Positions 37,774 to 41,484 of a DNA stretch of 64,000 nucleotides are shown here, piece by piece. This DNA comes from Cyanophora paradoxa CCMP329 (lineage: Eukaryota > Plantae > Glaucophyta), in assembly GCA_004431415.1 (NCBI GenBank), contig QPMI01000657.1, positions 124,001 through 188,000 of the forward strand, read 5' to 3'. The notes beneath the pieces are model-generated. The model made no database searches and was not told the origin of the DNA. It saw only the letters and a list, made by a program, of their open reading frames with translations. How positions within the stretch are numbered: the stretch's first letter is position 1; every line of letters begins with the position of its first letter. Made by a program: the position numbers and the translations under genes.

Positions 37774-38590
37774 CTAGAGCAGGCTCTCCAGCGCCGCCCG
37801 GGCCCGCAGCGCGCTCAACTCCGCGTCCTGCAGGCACGCCTCCACCCCGACGCTCAGGTCCGGCGTGTGCCGCGCCGCCTCCACCGCCCCCCGCCGCTCC
37901 CGCACGAGCGCCACGAAGCGCGCGTTCTCCTCCGCCCGGCTCGACCACATCGGCTTGCCCCGGAGCGCCGGCTCCGTGGACCACCGCGCGTGGTGGCCCG
38001 CGCTGGCGGCCAGCGGCAGGACCCGCTCGATCACGGTGTCCCTGCGCGCGAGGCGGCTGCAGTGAGCGCGGGGCAGGGCGTTGAGCTCGGGCCGGGCAGC
38101 GCACCAGGTCGCCAGCGTGGCCTCGCTCAGCGGCTCGCTCGTCCAGACGACGGCCTTGACCTGGGATGGACGCACGCGCCGTCCGCGCGCGTGTGCTCAG
38201 CGGCTACGCGCGCCCTAAAGCTTTACAGCGAGCATTTGCAGCTCAGCGGCTGGCGGGACTTCGAACCTGCTTGCGAGCAGTCCTCTGTTGCTCCACGTCG
38301 GCAGCCGGCCAGCCGAGGAAGTCCAGGAGCGCAGCTGCGCGTAACTCCGATGCTCCGGCTCCAGCTGCAGCTGCGGCCGCGCTGGCAGCGAAGTCGAGCA
38401 GCGCGTCGGCTCGAGCTGCGAATGCGAACTGCTTCGTGTTGATGGGCCCGGACCGCCAGCTGCCCCAATCCGCCTCGGACTTCGACATGACGCGGAGGGC
38501 GAGGGCGGCGGTTCGGCCTGCCGCGCTGGCCTCGCGCAGCGCGGCGTGCTCGCCGCGCTCGAAGGCCGCGGCGAACTCCGCGGGCGTCAT
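37774..38590 (-). CDS. Hypothetical spliced protein
   Basis: ORFs 38243-38617 and 37774-38175 can be joined by a GTTCG...CCCAG intron and have coding-like composition. No recognisable domain; the 3' end is uncertain. Confidence 0.45.
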
Positions 38591-39268
38591 CGGGGCGGCC
38601 AAAGGCGTCTGCAGCAAAATGGACGCTCGGCGCGAGCGCTAGCTGCTAGCCTGCGCGGCTGCGCGCCTACCAGCCGGCCAAATTAAAGCCTCACTAGCTG
38701 CGCGCTATAGCTCGCGCTCGGGCTCGCCTGCCTATAGCTAGTGCGCATGCCTCTCGTATACCCCCCCTCATCTCGCCTGAGTCGCCTGAGAGTCGCCTCA
38801 AGCTTGCCATCAATGCCTCTTTGATTTTTGTGGTTTTCGCTTCTCTTGCCACGTGATTTGCTTCTCTTTGATTTTGTGGTTTTCGCGGGATATCGATCGA
38901 GGATCTCTTGGAGGGGCCCCCTTGGGCCTAGAAAAAAATGCCCCGCGCTGTTGCCAGCCGGGGACAGGTGACAGGATGTAGGGTGTCGGCAATGGGCCCT
39001 CTCTTGCGATCCTTGGACCCACACCTCCTCCCAGACAGAAACGTGAGGCTCGACCGCCCCCACAAACAACTTAGATGGTTCGCGATCGAAGCCGATTTAA
39101 ATCGGCTTTAAACGCGACGACTGCGCCGAAACTGGGACCGCGGATCGCGGATCCCGGATTGCGGATCTGGACCGCGGCCGATCGACCACACCAGCAAACC
39201 AGCGTAGCTTAGCACAAATCAGCGTGTACGTAGCTCAGCGCATCCCGATCGCCCAGCAGAACCTCGGA

Positions 39269-41484
39269 ATGTCCGATCGGCCCGAGGACCACAGCGGGAG
39301 CGCGCTTCACGGCCTCCCCGATGATCTCCTCTCCCGCGTCTTCGTCTTCGTTGCCACGGCCCTCGATCCGCCTCGCGATCCCGACTGGCTGCAGAACCCA
39401 GCGCCTCCGCTCTGTTGCGGGCAACTTGAGGCGGATGTCTGCCCGGAGCTGGCGATCGAGCCGGATGCCATGCTCGACAAGCTCGCCCCGCTCCGCGCGG
39501 TGTGCCGGCGATTCAAGAGGCTGGTGCGATCGTAGCTGCGCGCGTGATCCTTGCCGTCTGCCTGGTGGCCCGCTCATCTGTACGTACGAGCGCAGGTCGA
39601 CGGAGCGACCTGGGAGCGCGTGCTCCTAAACTGCGTCCCCGACAGCGGAGAGGCCCCGGGCGAAGCGGACGACGACTTCGGCGTGGCCTCCCCCACCGCC
39701 GCGGGCCCCGCGCCCTCCTCGTCCCAATCGGCCCCGGCGGCCCCGGCCCCGGCGGCCGCCCCGCGGGGTGCGGACGACCCCGGCGCCCGCCTCTCGCGGC
39801 TCCTGGGTCGGCCGGAGAGCTTCAAGCGCGGCGTGCGGCGGCTGCGGCTGGTGCTGGACCGCTTCCCGGCGCTGTGCGGGGCGCAGCTGCGGGCGCTCGC
39901 CGGCGACGGGGCCCTGGCGCAGGGCCTCGTGGAGCTCGACCTGCTCGTCCTGCGGCAGCCCGACCAGTCGCACCCCGTCCGCTGCCTCTCCGTCCTCCCG
40001 GGCCTCCCCGCCCTCCGCGCCCTCCGCGTCGCCGCCCACGAGGTGGATTCCGACCGCGAGCGCCCCCGGCGGCCGCTCCGCCTCCGCGGGGGCGCGCGGA
40101 CGAAGCAGACGGCGCGCAAGAGCACGGGCGGGGAGGACCCTCGCAAGCGATACCGCGCGGAGGCGGCGGCGGTGGAGGAGGCGGCGGCGGCGATCGCCGG
40201 GGCGGGCGGGGGCGGGCTCGAGCTCCTCGACCTCCCCGCCCTCCCCCTGACGCGGGAGGGCGTGCGCGCGCTGCGGCGCCTCCCGCTCCGCGCCCTGCGC
40301 CTCGCCTCCTTCAGCCCGGCGGTCTCCCGCGAGGTCCTCCTCGCCGCAGCGACCGCCTTCCCCGCCCTCCACCGCCTCCACTTCCGCGGGTACGACGTGG
40401 AGTCCTACCTCGAGGACCCCCCGCCGGATCTGGTCGCGGACTCGGAGGAGTTTGCGCTGTACGAGGCCCTCGGCGACATGGCCGAGCTCCGCTGTGCGCC
40501 GCCCGCCCCGGCCCCTGGGCGCCGCCGCTCGCTCGCTCGCTCGCTCACCCATGCGGCGCCGGCGCAGCGCTCGGCGTGGACACGCGCCTCCGCTCTCTCG
40601 AGTTCCTGCGGCGGCTCCCGAGGCTCGAACACTTCTCGGCGATGCTCGCCGCCCGGGCTGACCCGGCGCCCCTCGCCGAGCTCGGCCCCCGCCTCCGCAC
40701 CCTCGGCGCCGCCCGCACGGAGCTCACGGAGCGGGAGTGGCGCCGCCTCACCGGCAACGAAGTAGACAGGACCCGCCGCCTCGTCGGGGTCGACGCGATC
40801 GAGGGCGACGAGGGCGAGCGGACCAGCGGCCTGCGGGAGACCTCCCGCGCCGCCCTCGTCGCCGCCCTCGAGCGCATGTCCGCCCTCGAGGTGCCCTCTA
40901 CCCCCCCCTCTCCCCCCCTCTTACCTCGGCGCCGGTACCCCCAGGGCCTGCACCTGCACGTGAGCAACGCGGCGATGCTGGCGCTCTCGGAGGCGGCGCT
41001 GGGGGGCCTGCCCCGCCTCCGCGTCCTCTCCCTCTCCTGCGAGGACGCCCCCTTCGCGCCCCTCGCCGTCCTCGCCGTGCGCACGCGTACCCCCGCCCGC
41101 GTCCCGTCCCGCCGGGCCGGGCGGGCGCGCAGGGGGCGGCGGCGGGCCTGGCGGGCCTGCAGGACCTCCGCCTCGACGCCCTGCCGCTGCCGCTCCCCGA
41201 GGAGGTCCTCGCGCCGCTCGCCGCCCGCCGCCTGCGCCGCCTGCGGGCGACGCTCTTCACGCCCTCGCGCGGGGGCGCCGGACTGGCCGGCGGGGCGCGA
41301 GGCCGACGCGGCGGCGCGCATGCGCTCGGACCTCGAGGCGCGCCTCGGCGTGCGCGTCGGGCCCGCCGCCGTGTACGGGCCCCCGCTGGGGCGCGGCCGG
41401 CGCGTTTTCGGGCATTGGGTGGACCCGCACCTCCGCCAGCCCGACTACAACGAGAAGCTCGCGCAGTTCTTCGACGCCGCGTAG
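39269..41484 (+). CDS. F-box / leucine-rich-repeat protein containing an internal LRLRGG-histone H3 tail motif
   Basis: LHGLPDDLLSRVF...LRAVCRRFKRL|VD (F-box-like with insert). LRR units LVELDL, LPALRALRV, LELLDL, FPALHRLHF, LPRLEHF, LPRLRVLSL. Motif at 40076-40147. Confidence 0.8.

What the first reader, a model, noticed from the sequence alone, without database searches (positions are those of the whole stretch)
40076..40147. Cryptic histone H3 tail behind a ubiquitin C-terminus (LRLRGG|ARTKQTARKSTGG) inside an F-box/LRR protein
Seen: CTC CGC CTC CGC GGG GGC GCG CGG ACG AAG CAG ACG GCG CGC AAG AGC ACG GGC GGG GAG GAC CCT CGC AAG = LRLRGG ARTKQTARKSTGG EDPRK. It is in frame within an exon, in a loop between LRR units. 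Known: LRLRGG is the exact ubiquitin C-terminus cut by deubiquitinases after GG. ARTKQTARKSTGG is H3 residues 1-13 exactly (native continuation KAPRK). PHD/WDR5-type readers and many K4 enzymes need a free Ala1 amine. Inference: cleavage would expose a true H3 N-terminus, giving a protease-activated histone mimic with K4, K9 and S10 on an SCF adaptor. It could bait chromatin readers/writers or separate the F-box from the C-terminal LRRs.
Basis: partly seen in the sequence, partly recalled or inferred. Interest (0 to 1): 0.93.

Follow-up and report, generated by a model that had tools for sequence, protein, structure and literature searches.

The report
Hidden histone tail behind cut site
An algal F-box protein carries, in a floppy loop, the tail end of ubiquitin joined directly to the first 13 residues of histone H3. 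The same pairing recurs in unrelated ciliate and other protist proteins, which suggests that a protease cut unmasks a histone look-alike; the cut itself is untested.

Summary
Window 40076-40132 (+) encodes LRLRGG followed directly by H3 residues 1-13, in exon 2 of the Cyanophora paradoxa F-box/LRR gene tig00021571_g22375. It sits in a predicted disordered loop of an LRR solenoid.

A paralogue about 50% identical keeps 18/19 motif residues but only 4/27 flanking residues; a third paralogue lacks the motif. This argues for selection. The scan noted the motif on another piece of this genome (s1-525001), probably that paralogue.

The pairing is not unique. LxGG|ARTKQTAR also occurs in different loops of ciliate ankyrin-WGR-PARPs (including Paramecium), in ASF1-H3 fusions and in true ubiquitin-H3-tail fusions. 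A Willaertia PARP carries the tail at its real N-terminus, and internal fungal tails without LxGG mostly lose Ala1.

Best reading (about 0.55): a portable, cleavage-gated histone mimic, in which a deubiquitinase-type cut exposes a free Ala1. Against it: there is no ubiquitin fold, deubiquitinases cut bare LRGG peptides poorly, no RNA contig covered the motif, and nothing shows cleavage. No paper was found.

The parts
40076..40093 (+). LRLRGG, identical to ubiquitin residues 71-76, with no ubiquitin fold upstream; predicted cut after 40093 (protein G251|A252)
   Evidence: no ubiquitin Pfam hit in P0006; 6/6 conserved in paralogue P0014
40094..40132 (+). Histone H3 residues 1-13 (A1, R2, K4, K9, S10 present)
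   Evidence: 12/13 conserved in P0014, which has T3A
40133..40156 (+). EDPRKRYR: decayed H3 14-18 (K14 lost here, kept in P0014) running into a short basic stretch that could act as an NLS
   Evidence: the NLS role is inference
40055..40138 (+). Predicted disordered loop (residues 239-266) between an LRR strand and helix; holds the cassette
   Evidence: pLDDT below 50 against 85-90 in the neighbouring repeats
39269..39523 (+). Exon 1: ATG and a divergent F-box with a roughly 40-residue Cys-containing insert
   Evidence: Pfam F-box-like E 0.006; RNA-like contigs over 39213-39522
39524..39595 (+). Intron 1 (GTGCGA...CGCAG)
   Evidence: depth of an X20 contig fits splicing 39523 to 39596 (0.66 predicted, 0.66 observed)
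39596..40493 (+). Exon 2: low-complexity linker, first LRRs, cassette loop, further LRRs
   Evidence: aligns with both paralogues on either side of the loop
40568..40890 (+). Exon 3 (LRRs and a helical insert)
40945..41076 (+). Exon 4 (LRR)
   Evidence: Pfam LRR_8 E 0.019
41133..41484 (+). Last exon and stop. The acceptor at 41132 follows P0006 and the paralogues; a DNA contig has one extra base after 41261 and one after 41270, which gives a single frame

Best explanation
The 19 residues form a portable, cleavage-gated histone H3 mimic. Shown: the cassette lies in an exposed loop of an F-box/LRR protein, is retained in a diverged paralogue, and recurs as LxGG|ARTKQTAR in unrelated proteins. 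Inferred steps: (1) a deubiquitinase-type cysteine protease cuts after Gly-Gly; (2) the new N-terminus is Ala1-Arg2-Thr3-Lys4, chemically like real H3, so readers and K4 enzymes that need the free amine can now bind or modify it; (3) because the cut is in a loop of a continuous solenoid, the halves probably stay associated, and the SCF adaptor displays the tail as bait that brings H3-tail binders to the ligase. Step 3 is the weakest (about 0.3 on its own). LxGG would be the way to obtain a free Ala1 when the tail is not at the start of a protein.
For: Paralogue P0014: motif 18/19 identical, flanks 4/27; at columns where the third paralogue differs, 13/14 against a background of 93/257 (p about 2e-5). 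The LRLRGG half is as conserved (6/6) as the H3 half. Disordered, accessible loop. Ciliate ankyrin-WGR-PARPs at 34-49% identity to the Paramecium protein carry LRGG, LKGG, LFGG or LYGG directly before Ala1, in at least two different loops: Leu at P4 and GG are fixed while P3 varies. A Willaertia PARP of the same architecture has the tail at its true N-terminus instead. ASF1-H3 fusions, 32-50% identical in the ASF1 part, all keep L[AS]GG before a full H3. True ubiquitin-H3-tail fusions exist (P0023, P0049, P0052). Internal tails without LxGG, mostly fungal, usually replace Ala1. In the PARPs the tail decays from its far end and keeps residues 1-8. PHD readers need the unblocked H3 start (PMC8166343). 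Internal Gly-Gly cleavage has a precedent in USP1 (PMC8024992).
Against: There is no ubiquitin fold upstream, and DUBs need a second binding site on the fold and hydrolyse LRGG tetrapeptides very poorly (PMC7477763). There is no biochemical evidence of a cut, modification or binding. No RNA contig covers the motif, and the gene looks weakly expressed. Only two Cyanophora proteins carry it, the third paralogue lacks it, and no orthologue in another species was found. The outside examples were found with motif-based queries, so their conservation is partly built in. In the less biased DNA scan, which fixed only GG before the tail, LxGG made up 8 of 29 loci from 2 families. Tetrahymena PARP6 is detected at about full length with a C-terminal tag (PMC6502085), but whether it has the cassette was not tested.
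Confidence: 0.55

Rival explanations
1. Uncleaved internal mimic or targeting signal. The loop works intact, as an internal H3K9/S10-type site (like the automethylated mimics of G9a or SetDB1), an importin-binding basic signal or a DUB-docking peptide. LRLRGG is kept for binding, or is a leftover of the donor fusion gene.
For: DUBs are inefficient on fold-free LRGG (PMC7477763). K9, S10 and T11 are kept in both paralogues. The loop is basic and is followed by PRKRYR. Internal tails without a cut site are common in fungi.
Against: It does not explain why LxGG sits in exact register before Ala1 in several unrelated families and loops, with Ala1 kept there but lost in other internal tails. K9 is often lost in the PARP copies while residues 1-8 stay.
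Confidence: 0.22
2. Tripwire or turnover switch. The cut is the point: a host or mobile-element (OTU-like) protease nicks the adaptor and leaves an F-box half ending in free LRLRGG. From my own knowledge, such an end binds ZnF-UBP domains and is a di-Gly C-degron in animals. The cut would switch the ligase on or off, and the H3 piece would mainly attract chromatin enzymes of invading elements.
For: Unverified scan notes report LRLRGG sites in Gypsy polyproteins and OTU-like proteases in elements of this genome. The family is lineage-specific and diverges fast. USP1 offers a precedent for an internal GG cut (PMC8024992).
Against: The element proteases were not examined here. The gene lies among host-like genes with no terminal repeats around it, and exact-pattern scans found no such junction in viral contigs. 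ASF1-H3 and PARP copies point to ordinary host processing.
Confidence: 0.15
3. Functionless relic: a fragment of a ubiquitin-H3 fusion gene captured into a tolerant loop before the duplication.
For: Ubiquitin-H3-tail fusions exist as possible donors. The genome appears rich in H3-tail fragments (scan notes). The third paralogue does without it.
Against: The motif ties with the best-conserved 19-residue window of the whole protein while its flanks have decayed. No abundant H3 transcript aligned to it at 90% in runs X18 and X19, so it is probably not a recent copy.
Confidence: 0.08

Closest known systems
H3 N-terminal mimicry proteins (H3TMs such as VRK1; PMC8166343)
   Same: An H3-like A-R-x-K start on a non-histone protein that binds PHD or Tudor readers and needs an unblocked N-terminus.
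   Different: H3TMs carry the mimic at the natural N-terminus, exposed by Met removal. Here it is at residue 252 behind a ubiquitin-type cut site and is an exact 13-residue H3 copy.
Ubiquitin fusion precursors (Ub-L40, Ub-S27a, algal Ub-NiSOD and Ub-actin; PMC6332867)
   Same: LRLRGG directly precedes the first residue of a partner.
   Different: Those carry the 76-residue fold. Here only the last six residues are present, inside another protein's loop.
Internal histone mimics (G9a and SetDB1 automethylation sites, viral ARKS/ARSK motifs; reviews listed, details from own knowledge)
   Same: An H3-like sequence inside a non-histone protein.
   Different: Those are short K9- or K27-type motifs that work without cleavage. 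This one keeps Ala1-Lys4 and a protease-type site.
USP1 autocleavage at internal Gly670-Gly671 (PMC8024992)
   Same: An internal di-Gly in an insert, cut by a DUB, with no ubiquitin fold.
   Different: USP1 cuts itself. The F-box protein has no protease domain and would release a histone-tail N-terminus.
FBXL-type F-box/LRR SCF adaptors (4i6j_B, which is FBXL3 by my recall; TIR1, D3/MAX2)
   Same: N-terminal F-box-like segment followed by an LRR solenoid.
   Different: The F-box is split by a roughly 40-residue insert and scores below the Pfam cut-off; Skp1 binding is untested. I know of no adaptor carrying a histone tail.
Clade 1A ankyrin-WGR-PARPs of ciliates (PMC2964712; Tetrahymena PARP6, PMC6502085)
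   Same: They carry the same LxGG|H3 cassette, and PARP6 is nuclear and co-purifies with histones.
   Different: Unrelated host protein. My term searches of those two papers found no mention of an H3-tail copy.

Membership tests
F-box/LRR (FBXL) SCF adaptor | N-terminal F-box motif | tested here: inconclusive
   F-box-like E 0.004, 4e-4 and 0.024 in the three paralogues, all below the Pfam cut-off; split by an insert. Atlas neighbours are F-box clusters.
F-box/LRR (FBXL) SCF adaptor | LRR solenoid downstream | tested here: met
   Model pLDDT 73, pTM 0.74; Foldseek top hits are all LRR proteins, best E 8e-8.
F-box/LRR (FBXL) SCF adaptor | Binds Skp1-Cul1 | not testable with these tools
   Needs a pull-down.
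Ubiquitin fusion precursor | Ubiquitin beta-grasp domain before the GG | tested here: not met
   No ubiquitin hit in P0006 or P0014, while P0023 and P0052 hit at E 1e-20 to 1e-18. The upstream region is LRR plus disordered loop.
Ubiquitin fusion precursor | LRLRGG directly before the partner's first residue | tested here: met
Ubiquitin fusion precursor | Cleaved by deubiquitinases | not testable with these tools
   Needs biochemistry or N-terminomics.
H3 N-terminal mimicry protein (H3TM) | A-R-x-K motif | tested here: met
   ARTK here, ARAK in P0014.
H3 N-terminal mimicry protein (H3TM) | Motif at the translated N-terminus after Met removal | tested here: not met
   Ala1 is residue 252; it would be met only after a cut.
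H3 N-terminal mimicry protein (H3TM) | Bound or methylated by H3K4 factors | not testable with these tools
   Needs binding and methylation assays.
Histone H3 or H3 variant | Histone fold | tested here: not met
   No Histone Pfam hit; similarity ends by H3 residue 18.

The most novel reading that the evidence does not exclude
Diverse protists use a portable LxGG|ARTKQTAR cassette, with no ubiquitin fold, as a protease-unmasked histone H3 N-terminus. It has been placed independently into loops of an F-box/LRR adaptor and of ankyrin-PARPs, and between ASF1 and H3. This would imply a fold-independent LxGG-cutting protease and a switchable histone decoy coupled to ubiquitylation or ADP-ribosylation.
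Probability: 0.45. Interest if true: 0.9.

Novelty: new variant of a known kind. Interest (0 to 1): 0.78.

Why it matters
Known histone mimics are constitutive: they sit at a protein's start or act internally. A mimic unmasked by a ubiquitin-type cut would tie deubiquitinase activity directly to chromatin-reader capture, and on an SCF adaptor possibly to reader destruction. It would also mean that some eukaryotes process bare LxGG sites in host proteins, against the usual view that deubiquitinases need the ubiquitin fold. The idea can be tested directly in a tractable ciliate (Paramecium PARP CAD8180328.1, site at about residue 1603|1604) and with short recombinant loops.

Tried and rejected
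Searches that found nothing: a homologue search with exon 2 alone (it was limited to proteins of 165-525 aa, so it could not see the full-length paralogues); encoding-contig look-ups for the window ORF and P0014, so no paralogue DNA and no dN/dS; two exact-pattern scans of viral contigs. None of ten literature searches found a paper describing the junction; the library lacks most subscription papers.

The full-length AlphaFold model was poor (pLDDT 37) and was replaced by a model of residues 145-560.

Rejected: chance or wrong frame; sequencing artefact; a histone gene or pseudogene (no fold); a classical ubiquitin fusion (no fold); cargo of a terminal-repeat element (no flanking repeats). An intron that removes the motif is unlikely: acceptor-like sites after it lie at 40314 and 40349, and using them would delete LRRs shared with both paralogues. 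It is not excluded by RNA.

Following the operators' note, my own joined gene model was used only locally and was not sent to any search; exons were searched by reference and the database model P0006 by id.

Full report
OBSERVATION. Window 40076-40147 (+) reads LRLRGG, then ARTKQTARKSTGG, then EDPRK. It is the only such junction in the window's six frames. A DNA contig spans 39818-40708 without a difference (the run may be the window's own source). The codon-position GC pattern of the exon (0.85/0.57/0.96) identifies this frame as coding, and the motif's GC3 (0.96) matches the rest of the exon. In 200,000 shuffles of the exon's residues, LRLRGG arose 123 times and ARTKQ 12 times; the joined 19-mer has a per-position probability of about 1e-23. 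The feature is real.

THE GENE. The ATG is at 39269. Exons are 39269-39523, 39596-40493, 40568-40890, 40945-41076 and 41133-41484, separated by short GT-AG introns. The database holds this gene as P0006, EukProt Cyanophora paradoxa tig00021571_g22375.t1, with the motif at residues 246-264. A DNA contig has one extra base after 41261 and one after 41270. With them the last exon is a single frame that matches the paralogue, so the protein is about 653 aa rather than the annotated 620. RNA-like contigs of three runs cover 39213-39522 at low depth. The depth of one of them fits splicing from 39523 to 39596 exactly (0.66 predicted, 0.66 observed). No RNA contig covered the motif, so its presence in the mRNA rests on the open frame, the annotation and the paralogue. 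My joined model was used only locally; searches went exon by exon or through P0006.

HOST PROTEIN. An F-box-like match (E 0.004, below the cut-off, split by a conserved insert) appears in all three paralogues, and the Atlas neighbours are F-box/FBXL clusters. A model of residues 145-560 (pLDDT 73, pTM 0.74) is a strand-helix solenoid whose Foldseek hits are LRR proteins, including several F-box ligases. Residues 239-266 are disordered between repeats that score 85-90. There is no ubiquitin fold and no histone fold.

SELECTION. Only two relatives were found, both in Cyanophora. P0014 (tig00021318_g20181, 49% identical by BLAST) has LRLRGG then ARAKQTARKSTGG then KAPRR in the same loop. That is 18/19 identity in the motif against 4/27 in the flanks. 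At columns where the third paralogue differs, identity is 13/14 against a background of 93/257 (p about 2e-5). The motif ties for the best-conserved 19-residue window of the protein. P0054 (tig00020572_g11559) has a loop of the same length without the motif; whether this is a gain or a loss cannot be decided. The ubiquitin half (6/6) is as conserved as the H3 half (12/13). No paralogue DNA was available, so dN/dS was not computed.

THE PAIRING RECURS. A DNA scan that fixed only GG before ARTKQTARK found 29 metagenome loci. Six are giant ankyrin-WGR-PARPs, all with LRGG, and several of them read best in the ciliate code. Two are ASF1-H3 fusions with LAGG or LSGG. Eighteen are H3 genes with a short MGxGG leader, and three are other. 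A profile search of 1.84 billion representatives added more PARP fragments with LKGG, LFGG and LYGG. One of them clusters with Paramecium pentaurelia PARP CAD8180328.1, where the cassette lies at residue 1600. Mapped on that protein, the cassette of the other PARPs (34-49% identity) lies between about 1020 and 1390, a different loop, yet always with LxGG in register before Ala1. A Willaertia magna PARP of the same architecture has the tail at its true N-terminus. Three ASF1-H3 fusions are only 32-50% identical in the ASF1 part but keep L[AS]GG before a complete H3. True ubiquitin-H3-tail fusions also exist (P0023, P0049, P0052) and are plausible donors. By contrast, internal tails in fungal VIT/vWA and other proteins lack LxGG and usually replace Ala1 with G, Q, K, V, T or R. 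Among the 36 retrieved sequences with GG before a tail, 26 of 27 with Leu at P4 keep Ala1, against 5 of 9 without. These counts are inflated by relatedness and by motif-based retrieval; they are a pattern, not a test. Two viral-contig scans were blank.

MECHANISM. The simplest account is that these proteins need a free H3 Ala1 and get it either by Met removal at the start or by a cut after LxGG when the tail is internal. PHD readers require the unblocked start (PMC8166343). In the PARP copies the tail decays from its far end and keeps residues 1-8, the part read together with the amine. For this protein, the cut would fall in an exposed loop of a continuous solenoid. The halves may therefore stay together and present the tail on an SCF adaptor as bait (inference). 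The main objection is enzymatic: DUBs use a second site on the ubiquitin fold and hydrolyse LRGG tetrapeptides very poorly (PMC7477763). USP1 shows that an internal di-Gly can be cut, but it cuts itself (PMC8024992). Tetrahymena PARP6 is seen at about full length (PMC6502085), though I could not check whether it has the cassette. Unverified scan notes report further bare LRLRGG sites in Gypsy polyproteins and OTU-like proteases in this genome, which would offer candidate enzymes. My odds: cleavage-gated mimic 0.55, intact internal mimic or signal 0.22, tripwire or turnover switch 0.15, relic 0.08.

COMPARISON AND NOVELTY. It works like an H3TM (PMC8166343) combined with a ubiquitin-fusion junction (PMC6332867), but fails a defining test of each: the mimic is not N-terminal, and the ubiquitin fold is missing. 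Searches for the joined strings found no relevant paper, and my term searches of the two PARP papers found no mention of the cassette. The library omits most subscription journals, so an earlier mention is possible. The scan noted the motif on another piece of this genome (s1-525001), most likely P0014. Verdict: a real, selected and recurrent feature; a new variant of histone mimicry whose central step is untested. Interest 0.78.

Noticed in passing
L006, L011, L036:5001-5969 (P0046): Natural ASF1-chaperone-to-full-H3 fusions joined by L[AS]GG; the ASF1 parts are only 32-50% identical. L036 is gene-dense. Organism unknown.
   Followed up: partly
L001-L003, L007-L010, L014, L017, L018, L020-L024, L026, L027, L029: Eighteen histone H3 genes with a short MGxGG leader (x = L, Q, C, Y) before Ala1; they would need processing after GG to give a normal N-terminus.
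   Followed up: no
P0044: H4, acidic linker, RRGG, then a full H3 in one 317-aa protein.
   Followed up: no
P0162 (CAD8180328.1), L004, L005, L013, L015, L025, L028, L032-L035, P0142: Clade 1A ankyrin-WGR-PARPs carry the H3 tail internally behind LxGG in ciliate-like genes and at the N-terminus in Willaertia; the best system for testing the cut.
   Followed up: partly
P0023 (L030:1237-1806), P0049, P0052 (L031:874-1401): Ubiquitin domain fused to an H3 tail with no histone fold.
   Followed up: partly
P0024: Bacteriocin-like double-glycine leader (ends ELVSGG) followed by H3 1-16 in a 61-aa protein from a JGI contig; natural or synthetic is unknown.
   Followed up: no
P0070-P0155: Fungal VIT/vWA and uncharacterised proteins carry long internal H3 tails with Ala1 replaced; vWA/U-box proteins carry the tail at the N-terminus.
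   Followed up: partly
window 39365-39485: The F-box is split by a roughly 40-residue insert with a conserved Cys-Cys...Cys motif in all three paralogues.
   Followed up: no
window 41261 and 41270: Probable single-base deletions in the assembly; the public gene model skips this stretch with an apparently false intron.
   Followed up: yes
window 39080-39117: A 38-nt imperfect palindrome about 100 nt upstream of the 5'-most RNA contig.
   Followed up: no
window 37774-38175 and 38243-38617 (-): Two upstream ORFs of 133 and 124 aa with no Pfam match.
   Followed up: partly
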